Positions 19,296-59,241 of a stretch of DNA of 64,000 nt are shown in pieces; within the stretch, counting starts at the first letter, position 1, and each line of letters starts with the position of its first letter. The stretch is taken from the sequence record ON568341.1; one strand, given 5' to 3'. The notes beneath the pieces are model-generated. The model was given only the letters and a program-made list of their open reading frames with translations. It searched no databases and was not told the origin of the DNA. The translations under genes were made by a program, and so were the position numbers.

Positions 19296-19539
19296 AATGC
19301 TAGTACTGACAGAACTAGAAATGTATCATAGATTTAACAAGTACTATCATTTACTTAAGCCTATACAGAGGATTAAATGTCCATTTGAAGAGAAACAGGT
19401 ATTAATTTATGAGCATAAGTTATTTGTATCATTAGGTACGAATGAACAAGAGTATTATTTGAAGTTGTACTTAATTACTTTAATTGAATTGATTAATCAC
19501 AAAACTCAGAAAGCTAAGAAATCTAAAAATGAAAACTAA
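19288..19539 (+). CDS. LGTNYQE-family paralogue
   Basis: SLGTNEQE. Confidence 0.8.
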   Translation: MFKMLVLTELEMYHRFNKYYHLLKPIQRIKCPFEEKQVLIYEHKLFVSLGTNEQEYYLKLYLITLIELINHKTQKAKKSKNEN

Positions 19540-19867
19540 TATTCAACTCAAGGTATACATATCTTATGAATCTATATACATCAAATGCAGTCTATGTAAA
19601 GATGTAATGGATTATAAAGGTAAGCCATTCACAATTACTTACAGTCTAACAGGAGGTTTTTATATATCTTTTGTTGATTACGAAAATAAAATATACAAGC
19701 ACATTGATATTAAAGATTTAAGTACCTTGTCAGATGAGGAATACTTTCAAGAATCATTAGTATGGGATTTAGAGTTTCCTATGACATTAGTACACAAAAT
19801 GATAGTTCTAATGAAAGAAACTAAACCTGAGCCGAGTGGTTATGAAGAATTCATTATTGAGTATTAA
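19529..19867 (+). CDS. FQ-motif family protein (short type)
   Basis: LSDEEYFQESLVWD. Confidence 0.8.
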   Translation: MKTNIQLKVYISYESIYIKCSLCKDVMDYKGKPFTITYSLTGGFYISFVDYENKIYKHIDIKDLSTLSDEEYFQESLVWDLEFPMTLVHKMIVLMKETKPEPSGYEEFIIEY

Positions 19868-19879
19868 GAGTACTGATAT

Positions 19880-20095
19880 ATGAAAATATTATCATACAAA
19901 GATTATAGTAAGCTTATCAGTGCTTTGCAACCAGAAATTAGGAGAATTAATTCTCTTCCTGTATCTAATGCAGAATGTACAGTACTGAAAAAAGAGTTAA
20001 TATTAAAACGCACAGTAGGTACTAACTATCAGGATAATAGTGTTCGAGATTTAATTAGAGGGTTAATGAACACAATAAAGGCCAAGTGCCATTGA
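19880..20095 (+). CDS. LGTNYQE-family paralogue
   Basis: TVGTNYQD. Confidence 0.8.
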   Translation: MKILSYKDYSKLISALQPEIRRINSLPVSNAECTVLKKELILKRTVGTNYQDNSVRDLIRGLMNTIKAKCH

Positions 20096-20101
20096 CAGTA
20101 C

Positions 20102-20130
20102 TTGACGGAGCTTTTCATTACTGATATAGT
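20102..20130 (+). promoter_or_regulatory. sigma70 promoter
   Basis: TTGACG-17-TATAGT with TG extension. Confidence 0.65.
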
Positions 20131-20159
20131 ACACAAACGTTAATCATAGGGTAGAAATT

Positions 20160-20405
20160 ATGTTAAAATTTTTAAATTTCCTTATCGTCTTGTGTATTGT
20201 TCTTGGGATTGCACCGTTTGTACTGGTGTATATGGATTCAGATGAAATGCAAAAGATGAATTGCACAAAGACGGGACAGAGTAGAGAAGAGACGATTCTT
20301 ATGCCTGTTACCGTTATTGTTAATAATATGCCCATTACAAACATGGTCCCTAACCTAACGACAACGTACCAGTACTCTTGTACAGACGGGGAGAGGTGGA
20401 GATGA
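20160..20405 (+). CDS. Small membrane-anchored protein
   Basis: N-terminal hydrophobic helix FLNFLIVLCIVLGIAPFVLVY. Confidence 0.75.
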   Translation: MLKFLNFLIVLCIVLGIAPFVLVYMDSDEMQKMNCTKTGQSREETILMPVTVIVNNMPITNMVPNLTTTYQYSCTDGERWR

Positions 20406-20722
20406 AATTTAATATAGCAAAAACATCGAATGTATGTATATTTGGTTATGCAGATGAGTTAGGTGATCTTGACATTCTTTTGTACAAAAAGGATGGTGTT
20501 ATGCATTTCAAGTACCAGGATGAAGAGGCAGACAATTATCCTTTACCTAATTTAGTACAAATGCAGGAAGAGGAATTATTCCAGTACAGCTTAGTATATG
20601 ACATTGATATTTGCACGATGCCAGTACTAATTAATATTCAAAAAGTGATGCTCGATGTGTTTGATAGGCTAATACAAGGCACACAAGGAAGAACCATATA
20701 TGTCAATGTACAAGACAATTAA
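20402..20722 (+). CDS. FQ-motif family protein (short type)
   Basis: QEEELFQYSLVYD. Confidence 0.8.
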   Translation: MKFNIAKTSNVCIFGYADELGDLDILLYKKDGVMHFKYQDEEADNYPLPNLVQMQEEELFQYSLVYDIDICTMPVLINIQKVMLDVFDRLIQGTQGRTIYVNVQDN

Positions 20723-21661: not shown

Positions 21662-21864
21662 TGCAAAATAGTAATACGATAACATTAAATGCATTACAGG
21701 ATTCATTATTAGATAGTATTAAGATGTATTACAATATACATTTGAGGGGTGGCATTGATGATTATAATTATTATTTGAGTTTAATTGTAATTGAGCACCT
21801 TTCAGTACAGGACAGGATTTTACATCCTACAAATCCTATGTATCCATCAATAGGTAAATTATGA
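21661..21864 (+). CDS. Hypothetical protein
   Basis: Coupled ORF, GTG start. Confidence 0.6.
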   Translation: MQNSNTITLNALQDSLLDSIKMYYNIHLRGGIDDYNYYLSLIVIEHLSVQDRILHPTNPMYPSIGKL

Positions 21865-22418
21865 ATGAGATAGAGTTATTAGCACACAAGATAAGTACAA
21901 TAATGCTTATCCTCAATAACAACCATCCTATATCGCAGATAGATGGAATCCTGAGTCAGAGGACAGGTGGTAGTTTATATTTGTCCATAAACGCAAATAT
22001 CGCAAGGAAATACATTGACATTGGTGATGTTGATGCTGAAATCGAATGTGATACAACTGGAATTGTTGATGTAGGTGCATTAATCAGTTCAAATCCTGTA
22101 TCAGTATCCCCATTGACCAAAGGTGTTAGTACAGGATTCGAAGGATATTTGTGGTATAATGCTAATGATAATTATTTTATATATCAGCATTCCAATACAA
22201 ATTATGATGAAGATAAATTTGAGTTCATTGACCCTTATGATGAAGCTGGAGTATTTCAACAATCATTAATCACAAAACCACATCAAATGATGTATCTAAT
22301 GTTATTCAGTACAATGAATTTGAATCCATTAATTAATGGTTTAAAGTTTTATATTCAATTGAATCTGGTTCATATAGTTTATGATTTATTAATGCAAGGA
22401 TATAGTTATGAAGTATAA
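21861..22418 (+). CDS. FQ-motif family protein
   Basis: DEAGVFQQSLIT. Confidence 0.75.
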   Translation: MNEIELLAHKISTIMLILNNNHPISQIDGILSQRTGGSLYLSINANIARKYIDIGDVDAEIECDTTGIVDVGALISSNPVSVSPLTKGVSTGFEGYLWYNANDNYFIYQHSNTNYDEDKFEFIDPYDEAGVFQQSLITKPHQMMYLMLFSTMNLNPLINGLKFYIQLNLVHIVYDLLMQGYSYEV

Positions 22419-22710
22419 AATGATGTATACTCCAGATATGATTTATGTTGAATTAGAAGACGATGACGACGGGTGGAATTTGATTTATTCAATTAGTTCA
22501 GGTTGGTACATGGCACATTTAAATGATAACAAAGTTACAGATTATTTTGTAGATTTCAACACCTTATCCGATGAAGAATTGTTTCAACAACAATTAGTGA
22601 TTGATACAGGTGGTTATGATGTGTTATTATTAAAAAAGATACAGAAAGCTGTTATTGATTTTAAGCCCAATATGTTGCAAAGGAAATATTATGACATCGA
22701 AGTACAATAA
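22408..22710 (+). CDS. FQ-motif family protein (short type)
   Basis: LSDEELFQQQLVID. Confidence 0.8.
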   Translation: MKYKMMYTPDMIYVELEDDDDGWNLIYSISSGWYMAHLNDNKVTDYFVDFNTLSDEELFQQQLVIDTGGYDVLLLKKIQKAVIDFKPNMLQRKYYDIEVQ

Positions 22711-23044
22711 TGTATTTGATATTAAGAAATTAAAAGAATGGGTTTATAGTATTGAAATTGAAGCAATTCCTTATCATAGATACAAACAATATGATTTATG
22801 TAATATAGATATTCGTGAGTTGTACGCATATTATCAGAGTGCATTAGAGATGCATAAGATATTTTTGAGTTCAAATTACATGACACGTTGTAATGATGCT
22901 TTTAAAGAATTTAATAATTATAATTTAGTACAAAAATATGTAGTATCAAAGTACATGTACAATCAAGGAATTAAAGGTTGTATTGAATTCAATTCGGTCT
23001 TTGCTTTAGTTGAGATAATTTTATGCAGTACATGTCTGATTTAG
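22691..23044 (+). CDS. Hypothetical protein
   Basis: SD AAGGA; coupled. Confidence 0.65.
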   Translation: MTSKYNNVFDIKKLKEWVYSIEIEAIPYHRYKQYDLCNIDIRELYAYYQSALEMHKIFLSSNYMTRCNDAFKEFNNYNLVQKYVVSKYMYNQGIKGCIEFNSVFALVEIILCSTCLI

Positions 23045-23520
23045 AGTTTAGTTTAGATGCTGCTTTTAAATTTGTACACAAGATAGAAACAATATATCGT
23101 ACATTATGTGCAATACGATTAGTAACATCTGAACTTGATGTTGGTAAAAGGTATCAGGTATGGAATAACACATTTCTAGACAAAGAGCGTTGTTCAACTG
23201 GGTTTAATATTTTATCATTTAATCCAAGTAATTGTTACCCAGAGAAGCATGAGCGTTATCCGAATGATGACATGTGGTTTGAGTACAAAGAAGATGGTGA
23301 TATGTCGTTCATTGAAGTTCCTGATGATTTTAATGCACAAGATTTAACTGAAGAATGGTGGTTCCAGCAGAATTTAGTCCACGATGATATTGATTTATTT
23401 TTTTATGTAGTATTTAAAATGCTTTATCATAACAAGATAGTACAAGATAGTGTATTTTTTTCATGTCTATATATTGATGATTTGTACAATGAAATTCAAA
23501 TCAACATGCCTGTATCGTAA
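23023..23520 (+). CDS. FQ-motif family protein
   Basis: TEEWWFQQNLVHD. Confidence 0.8.
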   Translation: MQYMSDLEFSLDAAFKFVHKIETIYRTLCAIRLVTSELDVGKRYQVWNNTFLDKERCSTGFNILSFNPSNCYPEKHERYPNDDMWFEYKEDGDMSFIEVPDDFNAQDLTEEWWFQQNLVHDDIDLFFYVVFKMLYHNKIVQDSVFFSCLYIDDLYNEIQINMPVS

Positions 23521-23574
23521 GATATGGGCTTTTTTTGTTTTGGTATTGACATAGAAGTACAAAACTGTTATCAT
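23508..23574 (+). terminator. Terminator followed by a sigma70 promoter
   Basis: GCCTGTATC...GATATGGGC plus T7, then TTGACA-17-TATCAT. Confidence 0.7.
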
Positions 23575-23600: not shown

Positions 23601-24134
23601 ATGGCGAGTTTTATGGTTCCAAGTACATACGAAGATGCATCAAGTGCAGTGCATAAGGTTCATCATATTTTTAATTTAATTATTAATGCATCAAAAAATA
23701 AAATGTATGCACCTCTAGTGAAATTTAATAAAAATGAGGAAATTTTTGTTAGTACAGAACAAACGATTTTTCCATATTTCAATAAAGATAGATTATGGTT
23801 CATGCATTCAGTCGCATTACAAAGATATAATATAACAAGATCCAACGAAAATCATAATCCAAGATATTTGCATATATCGTTATACCATCCCGATATTGGA
23901 GAGGATGAATATTTTCAGTACAGCACAGTACACCACCATGAAGATATCTTTGCTGCTATGCTTATTGCTAAATTGAACACCGTTGATTTGGAGAAGCACA
24001 AATACAATAATAAATCATGTAAGATCATAATCCCTGCATTCATAGCTCTTTATGATTATGTGGTGCATAACAAAAAAGATGATACATATGCTTTCAATGA
24101 AGAGTATTTGAATTTTTTTAAGGAGAACATATGA
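23601..24134 (+). CDS. FQ-motif family protein
   Basis: GEDEYFQYSTVHH. Confidence 0.8.
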   Translation: MASFMVPSTYEDASSAVHKVHHIFNLIINASKNKMYAPLVKFNKNEEIFVSTEQTIFPYFNKDRLWFMHSVALQRYNITRSNENHNPRYLHISLYHPDIGEDEYFQYSTVHHHEDIFAAMLIAKLNTVDLEKHKYNNKSCKIIIPAFIALYDYVVHNKKDDTYAFNEEYLNFFKENI

Positions 24135-24661
24135 GCAGTACAACAGTACAGAAAGCAATGACATTCAATGAAATTGGTACATTTAAAGATAAGATCATTG
24201 ATTGCCTTGAATACATGATTTGTAGTAATATTGAGAGTATCGAAATATTTAACAAGAGAAATCGCTCTTACCATATGATGTACACTGCAAAAAATACTGG
24301 TATCATTCCATTTATTTCGGATAGCACAATATGGTACGCATGTGATACGAAAAAATACACAGCAGGTTCGTATAGCGTAGGGTCACATACGGAATTGATT
24401 ATTCCTGAGCATTGTATACAAGAAGAAGAATATTTTCAAATGCAATGTGTACATTCACCATTAGAGTTGTTTAGTTTATATATGATACCGTATATTTCTA
24501 AATGTGTTCATGAGAATAAAGCTCCGTGGAATCATGAATTTGTATCGTTGAAGTTATTGTATAATGTATTAGTAGAATATTATGATTACAGGCACAATGG
24601 TACAATCAGTGATGTATGGGATTTTGAATCGCTAAGGGTGAAAACATACACAGGTGAATGA
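24131..24661 (+). CDS. FQ-motif family protein
   Basis: QEEEYFQMQCVHS. Confidence 0.75.
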   Translation: MSSTTVQKAMTFNEIGTFKDKIIDCLEYMICSNIESIEIFNKRNRSYHMMYTAKNTGIIPFISDSTIWYACDTKKYTAGSYSVGSHTELIIPEHCIQEEEYFQMQCVHSPLELFSLYMIPYISKCVHENKAPWNHEFVSLKLLYNVLVEYYDYRHNGTISDVWDFESLRVKTYTGE

Positions 24662-25277
24662 TATGACCAGAATTAAAATGTATGATTTGATGCAGTACAG
24701 TAAAATTGCAATTCCAGTACTTAATAAAGTGCTGGATGCATTCATTGCCAAATACCCTGAGAATTCAGAGTTACGCATTCCATTTCGTGTACCAGATAAA
24801 GATGATATATTCCAAGTGAATGTCAGTACACGTGGTATTACATTGCAGCAGAAATACATGGATACAGAATATTATGGAATAAAGTTGGATTCAGTTCAGG
24901 GTTCGAAATCAGCCTATGATTTTTTTGTTCCTAATAATATAGAGTCATGGGAAACAAACATTTCAAAGAAAGATGAAAATGATGTTCCTATTAGCGGTGA
25001 ATTAAACAATAAAGTTTTTTATTATTACGAAACTGATAAATTCCCTGAAGAGTTATATTACAATTCAGAAATGAGTGAAGATGTAGATGCATTTATGTTT
25101 CAATTATCTTTAGTACATGATATCATCGACGTTCAAGAGTTAAGAGCAGAAATCAATTTAGCTAAAGAGTTGTCGGACATGTTGCCACCGTTTAGTATGA
25201 TTTTTTGTGAAGGAGGTTATTTTACAAAAGAAGTGTTTGAACATTTCGTAGATGTTGTAAAAGGGTTGGATATATAG
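24654..25277 (+). CDS. FQ-motif family protein
   Basis: VDAFMFQLSLVHD. Confidence 0.75.
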   Translation: MNDMTRIKMYDLMQYSKIAIPVLNKVLDAFIAKYPENSELRIPFRVPDKDDIFQVNVSTRGITLQQKYMDTEYYGIKLDSVQGSKSAYDFFVPNNIESWETNISKKDENDVPISGELNNKVFYYYETDKFPEELYYNSEMSEDVDAFMFQLSLVHDIIDVQELRAEINLAKELSDMLPPFSMIFCEGGYFTKEVFEHFVDVVKGLDI

Positions 25278-25481: not shown

Positions 25482-25997
25482 ATGCATCAACACAAGCATC
25501 ATTCATATGATTTTGCAATTAACATTATGAAGTTCATTCGAGCGTTGGAGGATGGGAAGCTTAGTCATAAGTACAGGAAAGAGGGTAACAATTGGTTCAG
25601 AAATGATTCCGAGTTCAGGAGTCATAACATCGTGTATAGCAATCAGTACAGTGCCAATTACCTACAAGATGTAGTGATGTGTTTTGAATATGTATTGCAG
25701 TTCAGGGGTACAATCCAGAATGAATTAATGGATCACATGTACATCCGATACCTTCCAATGCATAAAGATGAAAATGCATTATTAGGTTCAATATACCAAC
25801 GAGTAAGGGAAATTGAGTGCAGGGATATATTAGATACAGAAGAATCGTATTTCCAGCAATCTCTTATTACTGCACCTGATTCATTACAGGCACATAATTT
25901 GTTTAATACATTACGTCAGAACATCAGTACAGACATATTTTTGTCATTATTGGATTATGATACATTTGTCAAAGATTTAGAGGAAATAGGTTTATGA
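25482..25997 (+). CDS. FQ-motif family protein
   Basis: TEESYFQQSLIT. Confidence 0.8.
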   Translation: MHQHKHHSYDFAINIMKFIRALEDGKLSHKYRKEGNNWFRNDSEFRSHNIVYSNQYSANYLQDVVMCFEYVLQFRGTIQNELMDHMYIRYLPMHKDENALLGSIYQRVREIECRDILDTEESYFQQSLITAPDSLQAHNLFNTLRQNISTDIFLSLLDYDTFVKDLEEIGL

Positions 25998-26350
25998 GTA
26001 TATTTTCGGTTTGTGTGGTAAACATAAAAAGTGATGGTAGTTTAATTGAATTTGAACTAGTTGATGACGATTATAATGCATATGGTATTAAAGTACAGGG
26101 CAATGATGTACAGTTCAGTGCAAGAACAGATTATGAAAATCCAGTCCATGTTCCTAATTTCATAGAAGATGAAGCAACCCGATTCCAATACGAAACGGTA
26201 TATGACAATGTACATATGCATATTGTTATGCAACAAAGTTTAGTTCAATTAGTTCCTTTGTTCAGACAAAATATATATGTACACGAGATAACGATTGGTG
26301 GCATAAGTAAATCCGTGTTATTCCGTACAATTGATTCCTATGATATGTAA
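25994..26350 (+). CDS. FQ-motif family protein
   Basis: DEATRFQYETVYD. Confidence 0.75.
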   Translation: MSIFSVCVVNIKSDGSLIEFELVDDDYNAYGIKVQGNDVQFSARTDYENPVHVPNFIEDEATRFQYETVYDNVHMHIVMQQSLVQLVPLFRQNIYVHEITIGGISKSVLFRTIDSYDM

Positions 26351-26359: not shown

Positions 26360-26908
26360 ATGAGTTTATTAGATACATTAGAAAAAGACAGAAGTGCAAT
26401 TAAGCGTTTAAAAGAGCAAGTACAAAAGATTGTATACAACGTTGATAAGTTTGAGGTTCCCGGAAGATTTGGTGATATTTCCCATACGGAGATCAAATCC
26501 CTGAAGTCAGATTTGTTGATTAAAAATAAAAATGAGTTGATTTTAGTTTTGAGTTCAGATATGATGGGGGCAAGATATGGTTTTAATTCAATATCAGTAC
26601 ATCCTAAGAGTGAAGGGTTATATCTATCACAGGGTTTCAATAGCAACGAGCAGAAGTGTTTTTGTGATGCCGTGCATGATCCTATGAAGTTCAGGAGAAG
26701 TGAAGCCCAAGCGTTATTAGAGCTATCAGACGAAAGTTTGTTTCAGTACAGTACAATATACGACAATGACAAGCTTCGTTGTATGTACGCAGTGAAGCAT
26801 TATGCACATGAGTTCTCTGGATTTGAATACCTTTTAGTCAGAACCAATACAATGTATCTTGATATGTTAGAAGAATACATCGATAAAGTTGTCAATGAGT
26901 ATTACTAA
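26360..26908 (+). CDS. FQ-motif family protein
   Basis: SDESLFQYSTIYD. Confidence 0.8.
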   Translation: MSLLDTLEKDRSAIKRLKEQVQKIVYNVDKFEVPGRFGDISHTEIKSLKSDLLIKNKNELILVLSSDMMGARYGFNSISVHPKSEGLYLSQGFNSNEQKCFCDAVHDPMKFRRSEAQALLELSDESLFQYSTIYDNDKLRCMYAVKHYAHEFSGFEYLLVRTNTMYLDMLEEYIDKVVNEYY

Positions 26909-27542: not shown

Positions 27543-28271
27543 ATGAAATATAAAGAATTTTGTATAAAAACATGGATGTACACTGGTGAATTGCTTACGT
27601 GTTGTAATTTGTACAAGCGTGATGTAAACTTCACAAAGGACAAAGTTATCAAGTATGAAAATTCTCAATTTTATTTGATGGATTTTAGTACTGGGTTTCA
27701 TGGTAAATCAACCGAGATGCTGGATTATACATTAATGGATGAGGCGGCACTATTTCAAGAATCATTAGTATTTGATAAGAAGTACATCTGTACATTAGAA
27801 GAGATGATTGAAATTCAGAATAAAATTAAATGTGTTCACAGGGAATGTATTGATAAATGGTGTAAAACTGGTGAAACTGATTTTAGTAATCATTTTAATC
27901 TAGGAGAAAGAGTGATGGAATTTGATTTTTTAATATCAGTGCATACATTCAAGAATACACATCAGTACTTTTGTAATTTAAACAAAGGTGATTTAATGCA
28001 CAGTGCGAATGAGTATATTCATTTTATGGATGGTAAATTCACATTCATTGATTACAGTTCATTACAATATCCACATCAAGATATGCCGGACTATACAATA
28101 ATGAATGAGGCTGAACTATTTCAAGCTTCATTAGTATTTGACAAGAAGTACATCTGTACATTTGAAGAAGTAATTACTATACAAAATGAAATGAAGGAGT
28201 ATGCATCTTTGAATAAACCCAATGAAGGTATTAATCAAGAATACAAATTCAATATAGAGATTCCAAAATGA
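27543..28271 (+). CDS. FQ-motif family protein with two tandem modules
   Basis: DEAALFQESLVFDKKYICT and NEAELFQASLVFDKKYICT. Confidence 0.85.
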   Translation: MKYKEFCIKTWMYTGELLTCCNLYKRDVNFTKDKVIKYENSQFYLMDFSTGFHGKSTEMLDYTLMDEAALFQESLVFDKKYICTLEEMIEIQNKIKCVHRECIDKWCKTGETDFSNHFNLGERVMEFDFLISVHTFKNTHQYFCNLNKGDLMHSANEYIHFMDGKFTFIDYSSLQYPHQDMPDYTIMNEAELFQASLVFDKKYICTFEEVITIQNEMKEYASLNKPNEGINQEYKFNIEIPK

Positions 28272-28627
28272 CATATGATTACTCTATGTACTATTATAAG
28301 TTACCTAAAGGATGGGACTTGTGCTGTAATCTTATTAAGGGAGACTCGGAACATGAGTTGAATTTATATATGCACTACAAAGATTCTTGTTTTAAATTTA
28401 TTCATGTATCACATGATGACTATGACTATGAATCTGAGAGTCTTATAGATTATACAGTACTGGACGATGGCGAACTATTTCAGGAAGCATTAGTGTTTGA
28501 TAAGAATAAGTACTCCTGTACATTTGAAGAAATGGTTTCTTTGCAAACTGAAATGAAGAGATTTGAAAAAGAAAACGTATTTAATCCATCCCCATCAAGA
28601 ACGAATAATTATTATTTCAATATATGA
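28268..28627 (+). CDS. FQ-motif family protein (short type)
   Basis: DDGELFQEALVFD. Confidence 0.8.
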   Translation: MTYDYSMYYYKLPKGWDLCCNLIKGDSEHELNLYMHYKDSCFKFIHVSHDDYDYESESLIDYTVLDDGELFQEALVFDKNKYSCTFEEMVSLQTEMKRFEKENVFNPSPSRTNNYYFNI

Positions 28628-28636: not shown

Positions 28637-29110
28637 ATGACATTACAGAGTTCATTGGAAAAAGCAAAGAAGATCCATGAGTACATGAATATGGCAAAAG
28701 AAGGTTCAGTTTACGGTGTTTTCAAAGACACAAGTACTCAATATTATGTGCCGGATAACCTCCTTTATAATGACTACTCAGATACAGAAACGTGCGTACT
28801 GGATACCGACCCTAAAGATTATGAATGTTTCATTGATATGCATTATGAGTACATGGTCTATATTAATGATGCAGATATTACCATCTACAGTACTGACAGC
28901 GATTCCGATGACATTATAATTCCGAGTGAAGTTCTGGAAGGTCCGTGGGATAGTGAAGAGTATTACTTCCAACAAAGTACTGTGTATGATGAAGAAGTTT
29001 TAGATGTTATTGTAATTATGTGGTATTTTAAAAGTATTGGTTCTGGGAACTTCTATTTCGATTACAAATACGTAAAGAAAACTGTAGATAACGGTATTAA
29101 CAGGGGTTGA
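28637..29110 (+). CDS. FQ-motif family, W.SEEYYFQ subfamily
   Basis: GPWDSEEYYFQQSTVYD. Confidence 0.85.
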   Translation: MTLQSSLEKAKKIHEYMNMAKEGSVYGVFKDTSTQYYVPDNLLYNDYSDTETCVLDTDPKDYECFIDMHYEYMVYINDADITIYSTDSDSDDIIIPSEVLEGPWDSEEYYFQQSTVYDEEVLDVIVIMWYFKSIGSGNFYFDYKYVKKTVDNGINRG

Positions 29111-29111: not shown

Positions 29112-29582
29112 ATGAGTTTAGAAAGAGCATTAGAGATTGCGAAGTTAATTGATTTATGCAGCAAAGAAATTGTATCAAATTGTCTCAATGGATATCTATT
29201 CAAGGAAGGTAAATCATATTGTCGAATGAGATACGATGACAGTAGTGAGTATATTCACATGTATGAAGAAGACCTTGATGATTCCGAAATAACACTGAAT
29301 GGGTGTGATGTTAATCTGGAAGATAATTACATTTACTTCAGTCGTGGTGCTGATATTTTAATACAAGAAACATCAATTCAACATGTGAATCCAGATGTAT
29401 ATCTTCCATATTCAGTACTGGATAATGACTGGGGAAGTGAAGAGGTTTACTTTCAGCATAATACTATCTATGATGAAGATGTGCTTGACAAGCTTGTCAT
29501 TCTGTGGTACTTTAAGAACACTGATACTCCCAACTTCTATATGGATTTGGATCTACTACGAGTTATAAAAGAGGATATATGA
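29112..29582 (+). CDS. FQ-motif family, W.SEEYYFQ subfamily
   Basis: WGSEEVYFQHNTIYD. Confidence 0.85.
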   Translation: MSLERALEIAKLIDLCSKEIVSNCLNGYLFKEGKSYCRMRYDDSSEYIHMYEEDLDDSEITLNGCDVNLEDNYIYFSRGADILIQETSIQHVNPDVYLPYSVLDNDWGSEEVYFQHNTIYDEDVLDKLVILWYFKNTDTPNFYMDLDLLRVIKEDI

Positions 29583-30022
29583 GTTTAGCAAGTGCACTTA
29601 AACTGGCACACAAAATACATCACTTCCACGATAACATAAAAAGTGGGTTTTATGGTGATAAAGTACATACATATGGAAATGAATATTATCTATCAGGTGT
29701 GACAAGATACTCTAATGATATTTTACTTATGGGATGTGATAAAGATAACTTCATGCAGTACACGTCATGTAGCTTATACACTAATTTTATTGTATATATG
29801 CCTGGTGCTAATATTACATTTGACACATCAAATACCTCGGTAGATTTTGGAATACTGGATGGGCCGTGGGGGACTGAAGAGTATTACTTCCAACAGAGTT
29901 TTATTTTCAGCCAAGAAATGCTTGATTCCTTGGTTGTTTTGTGGTACTTTAAGGAATTAGATATAGAACCCTTCTTTATGGACTGGGGGGCGTGTGAGTA
30001 TTTAGAGACAGAGGTATATTAA
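29579..30022 (+). CDS. FQ-motif family, W.SEEYYFQ subfamily
   Basis: GPWGTEEYYFQQSFIFS. Confidence 0.85.
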   Translation: MSLASALKLAHKIHHFHDNIKSGFYGDKVHTYGNEYYLSGVTRYSNDILLMGCDKDNFMQYTSCSLYTNFIVYMPGANITFDTSNTSVDFGILDGPWGTEEYYFQQSFIFSQEMLDSLVVLWYFKELDIEPFFMDWGACEYLETEVY

Positions 30023-30510
30023 TGTCATTGCAGAGTGCATTAAAAGAGGCAAAGAAGATTCATGAGTACATGATTATGGTACAGGAAGGTTTAGTGCCTG
30101 GTGTATACAAAACATCAGATACGGAATTCTTTGTTCTGGACAGGGATGATTATGATGAGTCCGAGGTACATGCTGAAACATTAGTTCTGCACACTGATAC
30201 TGGTGATAGTGACAACTGTGAATATCATATGTACAATCAATACATTAGTTATTGCCGTAATGAAGATATTACCATCTACAACACAGATATTGATGCTGAT
30301 GACACTATCATTCCATATTCAGTTCTGGAAGGTCCGTGGGATAGTGAAGAGTATTACTTTCAGAATAGTACTATCTACAGTGAAGAAGAACTGGATGTTA
30401 TTGTGATTATGTGGTACTTTAAAAGTATTGACTCCAGTAGTTTCTATTTTGATTATGAATATGTAGAGAATACAGTAGGAGAAGGTAATGTCATTACAAA
30501 GTGCTCTTGA
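30022..30510 (+). CDS. FQ-motif family, W.SEEYYFQ subfamily
   Basis: GPWDSEEYYFQNSTIYS; 39-nt DNA identity with the 28637 gene. Confidence 0.85.
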   Translation: MSLQSALKEAKKIHEYMIMVQEGLVPGVYKTSDTEFFVLDRDDYDESEVHAETLVLHTDTGDSDNCEYHMYNQYISYCRNEDITIYNTDIDADDTIIPYSVLEGPWDSEEYYFQNSTIYSEEELDVIVIMWYFKSIDSSSFYFDYEYVENTVGEGNVITKCS

Positions 30511-30934
30511 AAAAGCAAAAGAACTACATGGATACTTTGAAGATATAAAGGCAGGAAAGTTCAAAGAAGTATACAAAACCGAGAACGGTAACTACTACAA
30601 AGATGAAATATATAATAATTCCGTTGGTGTAAGGGTTATTCTTGGGTTGAATTCCAATAGTCCTGTGTCGTTTTCTGAATACAATAGAGATGCAGAATTC
30701 ATTAGTTATGTTGAAAATGGTAGCATTCGTTTTATTAATAGACAAAAACCATTAATTTTGAATTATGAAGTTCTGGATGGTCAGTGGAATAATGAAGAGT
30801 ATTACTTCCAAAACAGTACTGTATACGACGATGAAGTACTTGAAGCATTAGTTATTATGTGGTACTTCAAGAGTATTAACTGTCCTCGATTTTATTTGGA
30901 TTTCGAAGAACTTGGTAAAGATCCAGAGGTATAG
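30488..30934 (+). CDS. FQ-motif family, W.SEEYYFQ subfamily
   Basis: GQWNNEEYYFQNSTVYD. Confidence 0.85.
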   Translation: MSLQSALEKAKELHGYFEDIKAGKFKEVYKTENGNYYKDEIYNNSVGVRVILGLNSNSPVSFSEYNRDAEFISYVENGSIRFINRQKPLILNYEVLDGQWNNEEYYFQNSTVYDDEVLEALVIMWYFKSINCPRFYLDFEELGKDPEV

Positions 30935-30935
30935 A

Positions 30936-31250
30936 ATGAAAAACTTATTCAGTGTTCAGTACGTTCCAGGTGAAATTAGTTTATTGTATCTCTTTGACCA
31001 TGATAATTCATTATTACTAGTAGTGAAGAAATGCCAAGCTAGTTCGTTTGTTGAATACATTCACGATAATGAATATATACCTGATTTTTTAGAGTGTGAT
31101 TATCACGATGAACATGAATCATTTATTTTCCAGGAATCGCTAGTATGGGATAAGTCGATTAACTTTTTTACGTTAATTGAATTACAAAAGCAGGTGAAAT
31201 ATCATTGGGATTACTTAATTACCCAAGACTACATAGAGATAGAAATATAA
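30936..31250 (+). CDS. FQ-motif family protein (short type)
   Basis: HESFIFQESLVWD. Confidence 0.8.
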   Translation: MKNLFSVQYVPGEISLLYLFDHDNSLLLVVKKCQASSFVEYIHDNEYIPDFLECDYHDEHESFIFQESLVWDKSINFFTLIELQKQVKYHWDYLITQDYIEIEI

Positions 31251-31558
31251 TGACTAAAAATGAATTTGATTCACTTTGTACGGTTTATAATTCATTGACA
31301 GCAATACCTGACTTTATTAATTATATTTCAGCTTTAAATCACATTATGCATAGTTTTGAACAATCATTTGAAGAGAAATATGCTGGAAGAAAAGTTCTAT
31401 GTCATATGACAATGTACTTAGGAGATGGTGAGCCTTACACTACAAGTACTACATGTGAAATAAAAAAATATAATATATTATTGGGAACTATAGAATTCAC
31501 AGTATCCAATGGCGGTAGTTATATGTACTTTAGAGATGGAGTGGTTGAATTATTATGA
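31250..31558 (+). CDS. Hypothetical protein (helix plus KY.G.K.V family)
   Basis: EEKYAGRKVL. Confidence 0.65.
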   Translation: MTKNEFDSLCTVYNSLTAIPDFINYISALNHIMHSFEQSFEEKYAGRKVLCHMTMYLGDGEPYTTSTTCEIKKYNILLGTIEFTVSNGGSYMYFRDGVVELL

Positions 31559-32004
31559 GTTACGAAAGTGCAATCAAGAAAGCAAATGATATTCTACGCG
31601 TCGTTCAATTCTTCAAAGAAAATCCTGAATACGTAGATGATAAAAACCAAGAGAACGATGAGAGATTGAGACGAAAAATTATCTCTTTATTTGACACTAA
31701 TAAAGATAATTGGAGTCTATGTGAGTTAGCATACGATTATATTTCATTGAACCGAAATGATGATGTAGTTAAGATAGAAAGGCATGAATCAGAAGAATCT
31801 TTTAAAATTTCAGATATTTTATCCCTGAGTACTGAAGAAGGGTACTTCCAGGGTAGCACTCTTTATAATGAAGAAACACTTGACAATCTATGCACATTCA
31901 GTGTAATATATCAGAAATCTGTACTAGATATATTTTATCTTGACACTGCTGAACTGCATACCCTAACCAATTTTGTTACTACCGAAGAGGCTACATTCGA
32001 GTGA
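31555..32004 (+). CDS. FQ-motif family protein
   Basis: TEEGYFQGSTLYN. Confidence 0.8.
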   Translation: MSYESAIKKANDILRVVQFFKENPEYVDDKNQENDERLRRKIISLFDTNKDNWSLCELAYDYISLNRNDDVVKIERHESEESFKISDILSLSTEEGYFQGSTLYNEETLDNLCTFSVIYQKSVLDIFYLDTAELHTLTNFVTTEEATFE

Positions 32005-45987: not shown

Positions 45988-46348
45988 ACTAATAGAGGCG
46001 ATCACTAAGGAGTCAAAATACCACAAAGGGATTCGTCTATATTTTATAGATCTTGGTTCGATGGAAGGTACATACATTTATGGTTCACAATCATTGTCTT
46101 ATGATGCAATGCCAGATAAACATGTTAAAATCTTTCTAGGTTCAAGTAATAAAACTTTCTTGACAATTAATGATAACAGTGTTATTATGAATTCCCTGGG
46201 TCATGACAAAGTAGAAATTGACCTAAACACATTAGAAGAAATGGATTTTTTTCAATACGAGTGTTTAGGCGTTGACTTACATGGTATCAGTAGTGATATG
46301 ATAAAATCATTAATTAAATATTTCGAAGGTGTTTATAAATGTATCTAA
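45935..46348 (+). CDS. FQ-motif family protein
   Basis: EEMDFFQYECLG. Confidence 0.7.
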   Translation: MHLSNSEKKETRLTTTDELIEAITKESKYHKGIRLYFIDLGSMEGTYIYGSQSLSYDAMPDKHVKIFLGSSNKTFLTINDNSVIMNSLGHDKVEIDLNTLEEMDFFQYECLGVDLHGISSDMIKSLIKYFEGVYKCI

Positions 46349-46890: not shown

Positions 46891-47364
46891 ATGGAGATTA
46901 AAACTGTTGAAAATGGGAAAATTGATGACATTTTAGACTTGGACGCATTCAAAGTTCATGATATAATGTTTAATGTGAAGGACATTATTCAATGTCTGTT
47001 TTTATGCAGCAAGACTATGCATGATTTTTTTCACAACCCGAATACTAATGTTTTTATACTTACAATCAGTACTGAAAACTCGTTTATCATGGGTATGCCC
47101 ATGAGTACAAATGAACAGTATATTGATTGTGTTATTCGCAATAATGATTGTATTACCCCACAATCTGAAGTTCGCAAAAAGAAAAACACTTACACAATCA
47201 AAGATGATAAAATCATGATGTGTTGCAGTAAAGGATTTATATTGGACAATTTCATCGTCAAAGATAGTTATCATGACTTTAAAATTTCCGAAAATCAATC
47301 CAATGTAGTTCTTTATGCTAGTGATATCGAAAGTTTAACAGTCAAAGATCCTAGTTTGGAGTAA
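46891..47364 (+). CDS. Hypothetical protein
   Basis: SD AAGGA. Confidence 0.7.
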   Translation: MEIKTVENGKIDDILDLDAFKVHDIMFNVKDIIQCLFLCSKTMHDFFHNPNTNVFILTISTENSFIMGMPMSTNEQYIDCVIRNNDCITPQSEVRKKKNTYTIKDDKIMMCCSKGFILDNFIVKDSYHDFKISENQSNVVLYASDIESLTVKDPSLE

Positions 47365-56543: not shown

Positions 56544-56601
56544 TTTAATTCATGATATAATAATGGGTAAGGAACAATAATTAACACAAGGAGTGTGTGA
56601 A

Positions 56602-57330
56602 ATGCTTGACCGTATCCGTTTCGCTACAGAGATGGCGAATGAATTAAACATGGCAAATTTCCAAATGTTAACATCAGTAATGGCTGAACATGCATGTGCT
56701 TATTCTGTAAGTGGTGTGCAGTGTGGTCAGGAGAATATGTTAGCAGATGTTTATAGTGAAGTGCAAAGTAAGCAATATAGTGTAAAGACATATAAGGATA
56801 AGTTTGTTAGTCTTTATATGAACGAAGATATTGCCGAAGACCGTAAATTCACTGATTTTATTATTGAACGCCGAGTATCAGGTGTATCTAATCCTAATGC
56901 ATCAAGCGAGGAAGTTTTTGCAGAAGTACTGAAAGATATATACGAAAATGAATTAAAAAGTAAGAATCATTACAATGTACGTGAAACTAACACAGTGCTC
57001 TTGGGATATGATGAAGACGAAGAATACTATTATTTTCGTATGACTGAAGTTCCTTTTGAATACAAATCTCCATATACAACTACAGTGAAAGAATTTACTG
57101 AAAAAAGTAAAAACTTCATGAAGCATGAAGGAAATCGTTGTAGTATAAATGGTTATGACGAAAATGGCATTCACATTTATGAATGGGTTCACCCAAATTG
57201 TCAGACATACACTCGTTGCTTGAAAAAACGTTATAATTTAGAAGAGCATGAATCATTCTATTTTAAAGTTAAGAAGCAAGGTTATACTCGCCCCGCCGAT
57301 TCTGAATTGATGGGTATGATATATTTCTAA
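56602..57330 (+). CDS. Hypothetical protein (242 aa)
   Basis: Extended -10 promoter upstream, SD AAGGAG. Confidence 0.75.
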   Translation: MLDRIRFATEMANELNMANFQMLTSVMAEHACAYSVSGVQCGQENMLADVYSEVQSKQYSVKTYKDKFVSLYMNEDIAEDRKFTDFIIERRVSGVSNPNASSEEVFAEVLKDIYENELKSKNHYNVRETNTVLLGYDEDEEYYYFRMTEVPFEYKSPYTTTVKEFTEKSKNFMKHEGNRCSINGYDENGIHIYEWVHPNCQTYTRCLKKRYNLEEHESFYFKVKKQGYTRPADSELMGMIYF

Positions 57331-57340
57331 GGAAACTTCT

Positions 57341-57622
57341 ATGGATTTTTATCTACACACATGGACATACGAACAATATATTACATTATATCTTGAAATT
57401 ATTAACACAGAACCTAGGTGTGGTTGTTGGTTCGCAGATATCATAAAAGAGTATGCTGACGAGTTCGAGTTTGTGTATCTTGGGTCTGATATATTTGTAA
57501 AAAGTGTAGGTAAAACCGGACGAATCACTGATATAGATTACGACACTGTTAGTGTCAATTTCTATGTTGATTTTCCTGATGCTGGCGTTGATGGTGTATA
57601 TTGTCTTTATGAAATAATTTAA
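57341..57622 (+). CDS. Late small-protein family (divergent)
   Basis: HTWTYEQYITL; terminator at 57629-57653. Confidence 0.65.
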   Translation: MDFYLHTWTYEQYITLYLEIINTEPRCGCWFADIIKEYADEFEFVYLGSDIFVKSVGKTGRITDIDYDTVSVNFYVDFPDAGVDGVYCLYEII

Positions 57623-57666
57623 ATTCTTAGGCCAGCGTTTGCTGGTCTTTTTTCGCAGGTACAAAG

Positions 57667-57969
57667 ATGTTCAGTATAGATTTAATTAACAGTACTATCA
57701 AAATGTTGGCTGATTTGGTGAGACAATCCAATGGAACTTTATATCCATCAATGTATAAAATGTTTGACCGATACATCAAGGATTGTAACATATCATTATA
57801 TGGACTTGCTGTTGATATAGACGATTACTATGGAATTAATACTTCATATGAAAGAGGAATTTTGATTGGTATTAATATAAAGATGGGATATTATCCTTAT
57901 TACTGTATAGGATTACCAGATAATACTTTTGTAGAATATCCAGCCAGTACTATTAAATTAAGAGGATAA
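57667..57969 (+). CDS. Late small-protein family (divergent)
   Basis: LINSTIKMLADL. Confidence 0.65.
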   Translation: MFSIDLINSTIKMLADLVRQSNGTLYPSMYKMFDRYIKDCNISLYGLAVDIDDYYGINTSYERGILIGINIKMGYYPYYCIGLPDNTFVEYPASTIKLRG

Positions 57970-57976
57970 AACTAAA

Positions 57977-58555
57977 ATGAATGTATTAGAATTAAGTACT
58001 AAGCTGATTAGTATGCGTAATGAGTGGTACGATTGGTTTTATAATGGTACTGATATGGATTTTTCAAAATATCCATTTATGGAATCAGGATGTGATGCAA
58101 GATACCGCTGGTTGAGCAAAGATTGTTCTGGTTTACATATTCTAGTTGACGATAGTGGTCAGGGAATTATAAAAGATTTACTTCAAGTTGAACAACTCGT
58201 CCATGATAATTGGTGTGATAACGATCCATACCTTGGAAATATGATTTATGTAAGTGAAGATGATTGCATATTCGTTATCCAGCGTCATGGTAATTCTATG
58301 TTTTATGTAGCAGATAGCAGTACTCCAGAAGGTGCAGCAGCCGATGGACTTATGCCTAAGATTGATATATTGGAATTTGGATTACCTGAGCACTTCCAGA
58401 TTAGTACTTTATACGATATTCCACCACTTGAGTTCTTTGAAGAATTTAAATTGTACTACAATGATCTTCAAAAATTGAGTACTGATCGACGCATTGAAAT
58501 AACTGTTAAGTACATGGACGGAACGAAATTAACTGATACGGGGATAGAATTTTGA
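57977..58555 (+). CDS. FQ-motif family protein (outlier)
   Basis: LPEHFQISTLYD. Confidence 0.75.
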   Translation: MNVLELSTKLISMRNEWYDWFYNGTDMDFSKYPFMESGCDARYRWLSKDCSGLHILVDDSGQGIIKDLLQVEQLVHDNWCDNDPYLGNMIYVSEDDCIFVIQRHGNSMFYVADSSTPEGAAADGLMPKIDILEFGLPEHFQISTLYDIPPLEFFEEFKLYYNDLQKLSTDRRIEITVKYMDGTKLTDTGIEF

Positions 58556-59241
58556 TTAAAGATTTAGATAGAATTTTATATGTACTAAGGGGTGTAATTA
58601 CATTACATCCACAAATCAATCGAATTGAAAGTACATTTCAGTTGGAGTCAAGAGAAACTCCATATTCACATATATCAAATGTAGTTGGTTCACTCAGTAC
58701 TGAAGACTCGTCTTACGATATTTGTGTATGTGAAGTACAACCAAGTTCGGATCTTGGATTTGCTATTTTTGATAAAGATCAAAATCTCATTAGTATGTTT
58801 CAGTGCAATAATCCTTTTTGGAAAACATGCCTGTATCCAGAGTGGGCTATGCTTGATCCAACCAAGAGTACCATTAAAGTTTATGACTCTAAAAATGATG
58901 AAGTCGTTATTGATTTGGATGAGTCAATGTCAGAGGAAGAACACTTTCAGCTAATGATGATGCGTGCTATGCCGGAATACAATGCAATGATTAACACTGT
59001 GCAATACATTAAGGATACCATGCCAGCGTTGCGTACACATGAGTTTTGTCATCCGGTATTGTATGAACATCTAGATTTAGACTTCAGTACTATTAAATTT
59101 AAAGATAGTGTTAAAAAATATATTCAAGAGAATGTTAAATTTGATTTTATTAGTACTATGAACAATAATCCAAAAACTAATTTTAGGCATCAGTACAATG
59201 AATCTTTGTCTAATGGACGTGATACCAGTTGGTGGAAATAA
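58552..59241 (+). CDS. FQ-motif family protein (outlier)
   Basis: SEEEHFQLMMM. Confidence 0.7.
   Translation: MIKDLDRILYVLRGVITLHPQINRIESTFQLESRETPYSHISNVVGSLSTEDSSYDICVCEVQPSSDLGFAIFDKDQNLISMFQCNNPFWKTCLYPEWAMLDPTKSTIKVYDSKNDEVVIDLDESMSEEEHFQLMMMRAMPEYNAMINTVQYIKDTMPALRTHEFCHPVLYEHLDLDFSTIKFKDSVKKYIQENVKFDFISTMNNNPKTNFRHQYNESLSNGRDTSWWK

What the first reader, a model, noticed from the sequence alone, without database searches (positions are those of the whole stretch)
19529..59241. About 45-50 hypervariable proteins sharing one portable acidic-FQ-x-S-(L/T)-h-(Y/W/F/H) motif
Seen in sequence: almost every 100-200 aa ORF from 19.5 to 46.8 kb, plus outliers at 47.5, 49.6, 58.0 and 58.6 kb, has the motif roughly 35-60 residues from its C-terminus (e.g. 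SDEEYFQESLVWD, SDESLFQYSTIYD, SEEYYFQQSTVYD, TEEEFFQYSTVYP, GEEQYFQLSTIHE, LPEHFQISTLYD), while the upstream parts look unrelated. Two architectures occur. A long type has an N-terminal amphipathic helix (LEKAKKI, FESAISTAQDI, FTNAQKIAKDI), a variable middle, the motif, a helix and often F(Y/F)(L/I/M)D. A short, beta-rich type is about 110-120 aa. A similar segment also appears on a GIY-YIG-like ORF (49551) and weakly on the MORN protein (TEEEFNLMM). Inference: about 27 kb of genome encodes a library of variable domains on a constant docking tag or scaffold. Candidate roles are adaptors to one shared host or phage partner, a capsid or injection targeting signal, or a diversified anti-defence arsenal. 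I know of no described system matching this.
Basis: partly seen in the sequence, partly recalled or inferred. Interest (0 to 1): 0.9.

Follow-up and report, generated by a model that had tools for sequence, protein, structure and literature searches.

The report
Forty-copy early protein family, jumbo coliphage
A giant E. coli phage of the 121Q/PBECO4 group spends about 5% of its genome on some 40 very divergent copies of one small acidic protein of unknown function, and the shared motif is most likely the structural core of that one fold, not a portable docking tag.

Summary
The window is an Asteriusvirus jumbo coliphage, 99.5% identical to phage UE-S1.

**The motif is real.**
- 24 plus-strand ORFs match a strict pattern, against 0.04 expected from shuffles.
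- An iterated profile finds 38 ORFs with 39 domains. Two more join through RaK2 homologues, and about eight are marginal.

**It is one family, not a tag on unrelated domains.**
- Short (about 11) and long (about 16) classes are each homologous over their full length.
- The two classes align over 50 columns that run into the beta-sheet.
- AlphaFold models place the motif in a well-predicted helix inside a compact alpha/beta domain. The conserved S/T, acidic residues and D fit helix caps.
- In the long class the beta-meander is the variable part.

**No known relatives.** Nothing matched in Pfam, NCBIfam, PADLOC or the PDB, by sequence or by Foldseek. A search of 1.84 billion proteins found only 102 clusters, all small proteins.

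**Distribution and evolution.**
- Counts elsewhere: phAPEC6 40, RaK2 at least 29, Salmonella phage 7t3 at least 16, GAP32 at least 3.
- Orthologues are 1:1 and under purifying selection (omega 0.23).
- The proteins are acidic, have no membrane segments and are absent from the phAPEC6 virion proteome.
- The genes sit behind sigma-70-type promoters.

**Best reading:** an early, cytoplasmic, lineage-specific family of binding proteins for host takeover or counter-defence. The function is inferred, not shown.

The parts
19529..19867 (+). family member, short class (112 aa); AlphaFold target
   Evidence: HMM E 2e-17; model pLDDT 80.8, pTM 0.74: five strands, motif helix 69-79, helix 85-97, strand 106-111
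20378..20722 (+). member, short class (114 aa; TTG start of longest ORF)
21861..22418 (+). member, third group (185 aa): only the motif segment is detectably shared
22408..22710 (+). member, short class (100 aa)
23023..23520 (+). member, long class (165 aa)
   Evidence: 137 columns aligned to the 28637 subfamily at 93%
23508..23574 (+). terminator-like hairpin followed by a sigma-70-type promoter (11 of 12, extended -10) in the gap before 23601
23601..24134 (+). member, long class (177 aa)
24131..24661 (+). member, long class (176 aa)
   Evidence: 112 columns at 84%
24654..25277 (+). member, third group (207 aa)
25482..25997 (+). member, long class (171 aa)
26360..26908 (+). member, third group (182 aa)
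27543..28271 (+). member with two tandem short-class domains (242 aa); an in-frame fusion compared with phAPEC6
   Evidence: two HMM domains. N half is 74% identical to the phAPEC6 gp447c ORF and C half 84% to gp444c; the genes between them are absent here
28268..28627 (+). member, short class (119 aa)
28637..29110 (+). member, long class (157 aa); first of five adjacent close paralogues
29112..29582 (+). member, long class (156 aa)
29579..30022 (+). member, long class (147 aa)
30022..30510 (+). member, long class (162 aa)
30488..30934 (+). member, long class (148 aa)
30912..31250 (+). member, short class (112 aa)
31555..32004 (+). member, long class (149 aa)
32001..32537 (+). probable member with a weakened motif (178 aa)
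   Evidence: below the HMM threshold, but an iterated search from it recovers the whole family through RaK2 homologues
32889..33452 (+). member, long class (187 aa)
   Evidence: 82 columns at 75%
34051..34413 (+). member, short class (120 aa)
34337..34780 (+). member (147 aa); C-terminal half resembles the short class
34759..35100 (+). member, short class (113 aa)
35060..35644 (+). member, long class (194 aa as longest ORF; the alignment fits a start at 35123)
35641..35670 (+). perfect sigma-70-type promoter (12 of 12, extended -10) in the gap before 35704
35704..36180 (+). member, long class (158 aa); AlphaFold target
   Evidence: model pLDDT 90.4, pTM 0.87: helix 7-25, eight strands, motif helix 104-111, helix 116-131, strand 138-142, helix 143-155
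36177..36680 (+). member, long class (167 aa)
36637..36999 (+). member, short class (120 aa)
36983..37396 (+). member, short class with a C-terminal extension (137 aa)
37384..37878 (+). member, long class (164 aa); the only basic member (pI 8.8)
37862..38404 (+). probable member with a degenerate motif (180 aa)
   Evidence: its RaK2 homologue hits the HMM; hhalign E 7.7e-5 on the motif columns
38401..38964 (+). member, long class (187 aa)
38912..39475 (+). member, third group (187 aa)
39476..39536 (+). terminator-like hairpin with T-run, then a sigma-70-type promoter-like pair of hexamers 17 nt apart, in an intergenic gap
   Evidence: read directly from the sequence
40698..41276 (+). member, third group (192 aa)
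42194..42775 (+). member, third group (193 aa)
42780..42818 (+). hairpin with a -35-like hexamer in its loop, a T-run, and a -10-like hexamer 17 nt downstream
   Evidence: read directly from the sequence; resembles the repeated hairpin-promoter element
42837..43388 (+). member, third group (183 aa)
44984..45520 (+). member, third group (178 aa)
   Evidence: HMM E 2e-6
46339..46845 (+). member, third group (168 aa); last of the main array
46891..47364 (+). conserved non-family gene (157 aa) immediately downstream of the array in the four lineages examined
   Evidence: 65% identical in RaK2, 59% in 7t3, 54% in GAP32; 72 phage records; position seen; no Pfam or PDB match
57977..58555 (+). member outside the main array, third group (192 aa)
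   Evidence: HMM E 3.5e-12; its 97%-identical cluster passes E 4e-4 against 1.84 billion proteins
58552..59241 (+). borderline member (229 aa); variant motif
   Evidence: HMM E 3e-4, partial; hhalign E 1.7e-4
25994..26350 (+). marginal candidate. The other marginal candidates are 40127-40711, 41276-41704, 41701-42210, 43349-43987, 43977-44561, 45935-46348 and 49551-50405
   Evidence: hhalign E 0.001-0.02, always on the motif columns, against 0.09-0.67 for ten controls; none passes the HMM threshold

Best explanation
This is a lineage-specific multigene family of one small alpha/beta fold. It expanded by tandem duplication and unequal recombination in the early-type region of RaK2-like jumbo phages.

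The shared motif is the fold's most constrained structural element. It is a short helix, a four-residue linker and the start of a second helix. The conserved S/T/D and acidic residues look like the capping box and first turn of the first helix. The invariant Phe and the hydrophobic positions probably form its buried face. The conserved D/N probably caps the second helix. In the long class, the length-variable beta-meander is the part that differs between copies.

The proteins are acidic, soluble and not in the virion. Their genes are probably transcribed by host RNA polymerase early in infection. Each copy most likely binds a different host protein, through its variable sheet and loops, to take over the cell or block a defence.

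Shown: the family, its classes, the predicted folds, its distribution, purifying selection and absence from the virion list.
Inferred: the structural role of each motif position, early timing, and the binding function.
For: One family and fold:
- Full-length homology within classes. Short and long profiles align at 91.5% probability, E 8.5e-7, over 50 columns that include strands before the motif.
- The two AlphaFold models share the order beta-meander, motif helix, second helix, strand. The motif lies in the most confident blocks.

Motif as structure:
- Column shares in 231 sequences: F 100%, Q 100%, S at +3 93%, E at -4 78%, E at -3 72%, S/T/D at -5 77%.
- Only hydrophobic or aromatic residues occur at -1, +4, +5 and +6. 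Positions -2 and +2 are free.

Variable meander.

Duplication and recombination:
- Five adjacent close paralogues.
- A fusion ORF, and three extra copies in phAPEC6.

Retained function: all 38 have 1:1 orthologues in phAPEC6. For the 36 that differ, median omega is 0.23 and none exceeds 1.

Cytoplasmic and acidic: median pI 4.8, median net charge -11, no hydrophobic 19-residue window.

Not virion. In the GAP32 record, none of the array genes GAP32_048-057 is annotated as a virion structural protein.

Early-type context:
- Terminator plus sigma-70-type promoter in the intergenic gaps.
- Dense perfect promoters upstream.
- The array lies in the same-strand block as the Dam methylase, RNA ligase 1 and polynucleotide kinase genes.

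Faster evolution than neighbours across genera: 23-40% identity against 40-65%.
Against: - No binding partner, target or phenotype is known for any member. The function rests on context and analogy.
- An invariant polar Gln and a 93% Ser are unusual for a purely structural motif and would also fit a shared binding surface.
- The F/Q invariance is partly ascertainment. Probable degenerate members have other residues there.
- For 11 third-group members, homology beyond the motif segment is not detectable and no structure was predicted.
- Timing rests on consensus promoters only. No expression data were found.
- Omega in the meander is 0.35, so there is no sign of the positive selection an arms-race arsenal might show.
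Confidence: 0.55

Rival explanations
1. Adaptor library with one shared partner. The invariant face of the motif helix (acidic pair, Gln, Ser) docks every copy onto the same host or phage protein, and the variable meander recruits different targets to it.
For: - Q is invariant and S is 93% conserved across copies that otherwise share 12-20% identity.
- Short-class members also conserve a Gln in the second helix.
- One conserved non-family gene (46891) sits directly after the array in the four lineages examined.
Against: - The conserved polar residues fall where helix caps are expected.
- The motif is part of the folded core region, not a separable tag.
- No fusion to other domains was found in 1.84 billion proteins.
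- No partner is identified.
Confidence: 0.2
2. Packaged or injected proteins. The motif is a capsid-targeting or ejection signal, and the copies are internal virion proteins delivered with the DNA.
For: phAPEC6 capsids have an inner body (abstract of PMC7247149). The proteins are small and acidic.
Against: - None of the phAPEC6 orthologues appears among 62 virion proteins detected by mass spectrometry.
- In the GAP32 record none of the array genes is annotated as a virion structural protein, although other genes in that region are.
- The genes lie behind sigma-70-type promoters in an early-type block, away from the structural genes.
Confidence: 0.03
3. Catalytic family. The conserved E, E, Q, S and aromatic/His positions form an active site, and the copies are small enzymes with different substrates.
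For: Several polar positions are well conserved.
Against: - Only F and Q are invariant. The acidic positions are 72-78% and the aromatic position is mixed.
- There is no match to any enzyme family by sequence or fold.
- The domain is only about 100 residues.
Confidence: 0.04
4. Largely redundant copies. The array is kept for dosage or as raw material, without distinct targets for each copy.
For: Copy number differs between close relatives, and one fusion exists. Omega is somewhat higher than in neighbouring genes, 0.23 against 0.15.
Against: - Every copy has a 1:1 orthologue under purifying selection.
- Paralogues are far too divergent for dosage (12-20% identity).
- The arrays in RaK2 and the window remain roughly collinear.
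Confidence: 0.1

Closest known systems
Lineage-specific expansion of a zinc ribbon (about 35 copies) in Bacillus phage G, described by Iyer et al. 2021 (PMC7824862)
   Same: Tens of copies of one small domain in a single jumbo phage genome, restricted to one lineage, with function only guessed.
   Different: A different fold with no metal-binding pattern; acidic rather than nucleic-acid-binding in character; present across several phage genera instead of one phage. That paper's text does not mention this family in the passages searched.
[quoted passage not shown]
   Same: This is probably the same set of genes in part. At least 29 members lie in RaK2 at 245-276 kb of the record.
   Different: That paper gives no family definition, motif, structure or distribution.
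PHROG families of unknown function, such as phrog_12674, 9317, 13866, 15629, 32253, 30978, 30243, 34636, 38478 and 37163
   Same: Window members match these at E 1e-52 to 1e-137, with weaker cross-hits between them.
   Different: PHROGs splits the family into many unannotated groups and does not unite them.
Poxvirus ankyrin/PRANC and cellular F-box substrate-receptor families (my own knowledge; not tested as homologues)
   Same: A model for the adaptor reading: many paralogues with a constant partner-docking element and a variable target-binding part.
   Different: In those families the docking element is a separate module appended to repeat domains, and the partner is known. Here the motif lies inside one domain and no partner is known.
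SUKH and other immunity-protein superfamilies in tandem arrays (my own knowledge)
   Same: Small, very divergent alpha+beta proteins in long same-strand arrays that act by binding other proteins.
   Different: No Pfam SUKH or SMI1_KNR4 match at E up to 1, no Foldseek match to any solved structure, and no adjacent toxin genes.
Early host-takeover gene blocks of large lytic phages, such as the T4 early regions and the SPO1 host-takeover module (my own knowledge)
   Same: Same-strand blocks of small genes behind strong host-type promoters, non-virion, mostly of unknown function.
   Different: Those blocks hold mostly unrelated genes, not some forty copies of one fold.

Membership tests
Any Pfam-A, NCBIfam or PADLOC family | Match at or above the curated cut-off | tested here: not met
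   All 37 aligned members were scanned. No family was hit by more than one member and none was near its cut-off.
PHROGs unknown-function families | Significant match to the family profile | tested here: met
   Eight of the ten members scanned match one PHROG of unknown function at E 1e-52 to 1e-137; the tenth, 19529, only at E 5e-7.
Any protein with a solved structure | Sequence-profile match or fold match | tested here: not met
   Profile searches of the PDB: best E 0.1. Foldseek: best E 0.14 for the short model (TM up to 0.33) and 1.4 for the long model (TM 0.17).
SUKH / SMI1_KNR4 immunity proteins | Pfam SUKH-type match or fold match to solved SUKH proteins | tested here: not met
   Absent from the Pfam lists at E up to 1 and from the Foldseek lists.
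T4 MRH-like family (PF24070) | Score of at least 24.4 bits | tested here: not met
   One member only, 15 bits, E 0.024.
DUF2283 (PF10049), the name UniRef gives to a close homologue | Score of at least 23 bits | tested here: not met
   P0031 scores 13.9 bits, E 0.063. No window member matches.
   No Pfam family at E up to 10. PHROG 15199, unknown function.
   No MORN match at E up to 10. PHROG 16210, unknown function.
Virion-packaged or injected proteins | Detection in purified virions | tested here: not met
   The phAPEC6 orthologues are absent from the published table of 62 virion proteins.
Portable docking motif on unrelated domains | The motif occurs on different folds or as a separable module | tested here: not met
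   Homology extends beyond the motif within and between classes. All 102 clusters in 1.84 billion proteins are 49-241 aa. Still inconclusive for the 11 third-group members.
Portable docking motif on unrelated domains | A common binding partner | not testable with these tools
   No complex prediction tool or interaction data were available.
Lineage-specific expansion of early phage genes | Tandem same-strand array, restricted to one clade, with deep paralogue divergence | tested here: met
Lineage-specific expansion of early phage genes | Early transcription | tested here: inconclusive
   Sigma-70-type promoters and terminators lie in the gaps, but no expression data were found.
Targeted hypermutation (diversity-generating retroelement type) | Orthologues differ sharply at a variable region while the rest is identical | tested here: not met
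   Orthologues are 1:1 with median 91.6% identity and omega 0.23. The meander has omega 0.35. A reverse transcriptase and template repeat were not searched for.

The most novel reading that the evidence does not exclude
The family is a phage-encoded set of substrate receptors. Every copy uses the invariant Phe-Gln-x-Ser face to dock on one shared partner, either a host machine or the conserved 157-aa gene that follows the array in every lineage examined. The variable beta-meander brings a different host or defence protein to that partner. This would be a bacterial-virus counterpart of F-box or PRANC receptor families, built on a fold with no solved relative.
Probability: 0.15. Interest if true: 0.85.

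Novelty: new member of a known kind. Interest (0 to 1): 0.55.

Why it matters
About 18.6 kb of a 358-kb phage genome, roughly 5%, is kept under purifying selection to encode some forty versions of one small protein. No database names that protein and no solved structure resembles it. The copy number is on a par with the roughly 35-copy expansion in Bacillus phage G that Iyer et al. (2021) called unprecedented.

The family is shared by jumbo phages of Escherichia, Klebsiella, Salmonella and Cronobacter that are being considered for therapy. In those phages more than 80% of genes have no assigned function.

Defining the family gives these genomes one annotation in place of many 'hypothetical proteins'. 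It provides a profile for finding further members. It also gives a bounded set of candidates for proteins that act on the host cell early in infection.

Tried and rejected
- **Named families.** Pfam, NCBIfam and PADLOC scans of all members gave nothing consistent.
- **Solved structures.** PDB profile searches with three alignments gave nothing. Foldseek of both models against the PDB gave nothing significant. The MHC-like platform, EPCR and p32 hits have TM 0.16-0.33, and I treat them as topological noise. BFVD returned only the family's own members.
- **Weak leads.** The DUF2283 and T4 MRH leads are below threshold.
- **Literature.** Searches on 121Q, PBECO4, RaK2, phAPEC6, UE-S1, Sharanji, fEgEco12 and jumbo-phage comparative genomics found no description of this family.
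- **Positive selection.** Whole-gene and per-segment omega are all below 0.4.
- **Not possible.** The structure-prediction cap (two models) prevented a model of a third-group member. Model coordinates are not exposed, so I could not measure burial of the motif.
- **Correction.** My first notebook entry said 26 strict matches; the correct number is 24.

Full report
**What the window is.** A 7.9-kb piece of the region is 99.5% identical to Escherichia phage UE-S1. It is about 92% identical to 121Q, PBECO4, phAPEC6, G17 and Sharanji, all jumbo coliphages of the genus Asteriusvirus. Nearly all ORFs lie on the plus strand, and G+C is 30-34% across the region.

Residue shuffles give 0.04 on average and never more than 2.
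- A profile built from the motif region and iterated on all ORFs of both strands converges on 38 ORFs and 39 domains. None of the 42 minus-strand control ORFs is hit.
- 36 of the 52 ORFs of at least 100 aa that start between 19529 and 46845 are members.
- ORF 32001 recovers the whole family when iterated through RaK2 homologues. ORF 37862 is linked in the same way.
- Eight more ORFs align on the motif columns at hhalign E 0.001-0.02, whereas ten control genes give 0.09-0.67.

So about 40 members are well supported and about 48 is an upper estimate.

**Outliers and labels.**
- The labels GIY-YIG (49551) and MORN (51137) have no Pfam support even at E up to 10.

**Are the upstream parts unrelated?** Mostly not.
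- Profile-profile comparison of orthologue-enriched subfamilies shows a short class of about 11 ORFs, 100-147 aa.
- It also shows a long class of about 16 ORFs, 147-194 aa. Members of each class align over 100-146 columns at 93-100% probability.
- The short and long profiles align at 91.5% probability and E 8.5e-7 over 50 columns. These include about 35 residues of strand upstream of the motif.
- Eleven 'third-group' ORFs (168-229 aa) share only the motif segment detectably. Their orthologue clusters still pass E below 0.001 on their own in a search of 1.84 billion proteins.
- These eleven also begin with a helix-like amphipathic N-terminus and carry the motif at a similar position. I could not model them.

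**Structure.**
- AlphaFold on the short member 19529 gives pLDDT 80.8 and pTM 0.74. The model has five strands, the motif helix (69-79), a second helix and a final strand.
- The long member 35704 gives pLDDT 90.4 and pTM 0.87. The model has an N-terminal helix, eight strands, the motif helix (104-111), a four-residue linker, a second helix, a strand carrying the F-Y-L-D element, and a last helix.
- The motif lies in the most confident blocks of both models.
- Foldseek finds no solved structure for either model (best E 0.14 and 1.4). In the viral predicted-structure library it finds only the family's own members.
- Sequence profiles find nothing in the PDB, Pfam, NCBIfam or PADLOC.
- PHROGs holds the members as many separate families of unknown function.

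**What the motif is.** I computed column shares over 231 family sequences.
- F is 100% and Q is 100%.
- S three residues after F is 93%. The two acidic positions before F are 78% and 72% Glu.
- S, T or D one residue before the first of these two acidic positions is 77%. D or N seven residues after F is 62%.
- The positions at -1, +4, +5 and +6 hold only hydrophobic or aromatic residues. Positions -2 and +2 are free.

Set against the predicted secondary structure, this pattern reads as follows.
- An N-cap and acidic first turn of a short helix.
- A buried face formed by the hydrophobic positions.
- A C-terminal Ser, and an extended hydrophobic linker.
- The N-cap of the next helix.

This is inference. 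I could not measure burial because the coordinates are not exposed. The invariance of F and Q is partly ascertainment, since probable degenerate members have other residues there. The invariant Gln is the one feature that a purely structural reading explains least well.

**Where the variation lies.**
- In the long class the motif segment has 42% mean pairwise identity and the helices keep fixed lengths. The beta-meander has 12-16% identity and varies from 63 to 92 residues.
- Between the window and phAPEC6, the meander takes 18.4 amino-acid differences per 100 sites, against 7-9 elsewhere. Its omega is 0.35, against 0.21 for the rest.

**Evolution.**
- All 38 members have a 1:1 orthologue in phAPEC6. 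For the 36 pairs that differ, median identity is 91.6% and median omega 0.23, and none exceeds 1. For 84 other genes, median omega is 0.15.
- The copies are therefore old and individually maintained, not hypervariable in the sense of ongoing diversification.
- Turnover does occur. ORF 27543 is an in-frame fusion of the orthologues of two phAPEC6 genes with the genes between them missing. phAPEC6 has three members with no counterpart here. Five adjacent genes (28637-30934) are close paralogues.
- Across genera the family changes much faster than its neighbours. RaK2 members are 23-40% identical to their best window match, or match only at the motif. Flanking genes are 40-65% identical.

**Distribution.**
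- An exhaustive profile search of 1.84 billion representative proteins finds only 102 clusters. All are 49-241 aa, with the domain in the C-terminal part, and none is a larger fusion protein.
- The named clusters come from Escherichia, Salmonella and Klebsiella jumbo phages, or from about 350-kb contigs filed under E. coli.
- In syntenic regions I count 40 members in phAPEC6, at least 29 in Klebsiella phage RaK2, at least 16 in Salmonella phage 7t3 and at least 3 in Cronobacter phage GAP32.
- In the four lineages examined, the array ends at the same conserved 157-aa gene. The same block of Dam methylase, cytidylyltransferase (so annotated in the phAPEC6, RaK2 and GAP32 records), RNA ligase 1 and polynucleotide kinase lies further downstream in the window, phAPEC6, RaK2 and GAP32.

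**Context and properties.**
- Members are acidic (median pI 4.8, median net charge -11; other ORFs pI 5.9 and -1). They have no hydrophobic segment long enough to span a membrane.
- Genes overlap by a median of 4 nt.
- The true intergenic gaps at 23.5, 35.6, 39.5 and 42.8 kb each hold a sigma-70-type promoter. Three of these are preceded or overlapped by a terminator-like hairpin.
- The first 13 kb of the window carries seven perfect and many near-perfect sigma-70 promoters.
- In the GAP32 record, similar promoters and terminators are annotated in the equivalent region.
- None of the phAPEC6 orthologues is among the 62 virion proteins identified by mass spectrometry.

**Best explanation and rivals.**
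- I conclude that this is a lineage-specific expansion of one small alpha/beta fold, expressed early in the cytoplasm.
- The motif is the fold's conserved helix-linker-helix core. In the long class, the variable meander is the likely binding surface.
- The most probable role is binding of different host or defence proteins.
- The family and fold part of this statement is well supported. The function is inferred from context and analogy.
- The main rival is that the invariant polar face docks all copies on one shared partner. It is not excluded, and I give it about 0.2.
- Packaging into virions is contradicted. Catalysis and mere redundancy have little support.

**Novelty.**
- No paper I could search describes the family. 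The RaK2 paper notes only that nearly 10% of its gene products are paralogues.
- The comparative study of 224 jumbo phages calls a roughly 35-copy expansion in phage G unprecedented, and does not mention this family in the passages searched.
- Expansions of small early genes in large phages are a known kind of thing, so I file this as a new member of a known kind. It is notable for its size, its spread over several genera, and a fold with no solved relative.

**Rule check.** I noticed no breach of the operators' added rule. Alignment tools printed consensus lines on their own, and I used none of them.

Noticed in passing
window 13872-21151, plus 32515-32902: A second, separate paralogue family of about 30 ORFs of 63-96 aa in a tight same-strand array. 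It lies directly upstream of the FQ family and is interleaved with its first members. One member matches phrog_4148 (unknown function); there is no Pfam match. Orthologue omega is 0.33. RaK2 has homologues.
   Followed up: partly
window 53960-55369: A third small family of five adjacent ORFs of 91-103 aa related by BLAST. One member matches phrog_21004 (unknown function); there is no Pfam match.
   Followed up: partly
window 3698-3725, 7055-7082, 10062-10089, 12321-12348; similar at 42780-42802: A repeated 28-nt perfect hairpin with a -35-like hexamer in its loop and stem, followed by a -10-like hexamer. Three of the copies are identical. It looks like a combined terminator and promoter element between early genes.
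   Followed up: no
window 1-13000: Seven perfect sigma-70 consensus promoters (at 4273, 5659, 7308, 7648, 8078, 10500 and 12022) and many 11-of-12 matches, all on the plus strand. In total there are 100 promoter-like sites against 75 expected, and 18 terminator-like sites against 10 expected. Nearly every small gene seems to have its own promoter.
   Followed up: partly
window 46891-47364: A 157-aa gene of unknown function that is far better conserved than its neighbours (54-65% identity across genera, 72 phage records). In the four lineages examined it sits directly after the FQ array. No Pfam or PDB match.
   Followed up: partly
window 51699-52220, 59503-60645, 61742-62674: Dam-type adenine methyltransferase, T4-type RNA ligase 1, and polynucleotide kinase/phosphatase. 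The last two form the tRNA-repair pair that the phAPEC6 paper links to countering the Prr system. All lie in the same strand block as the family.
   Followed up: partly
window 49551-50405, 51137-51682, 58552-59241: Three larger ORFs share a variant segment: acidic residues, then F, then Q or N, then L-M-M/L. In 58552 it aligns to the motif columns at E 1.7e-4. This could be a distant branch of the family or convergence.
   Followed up: partly
L001 13010-13387 (phAPEC6 gp447c): This family member is annotated 'amidohydrolase 3' in the phAPEC6 record. Nothing in my searches supports that name.
   Followed up: no
proteins P0031, P0012, P0017, P0020, P0028: Close homologues are filed in public databases under Actinomadura adrarensis (named as a DUF2283 protein) and under Escherichia coli, on contigs of 350-380 kb. 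These look like phage sequence in bacterial assemblies, and the DUF2283 name is below the Pfam cut-off.
   Followed up: partly
window 31205-31558, 62900-63157, 63157-63411: An iterated search from 31205 links it to two small ORFs near the end of the window and to nine ORFs in related phages. This is another small paralogue group.
   Followed up: no
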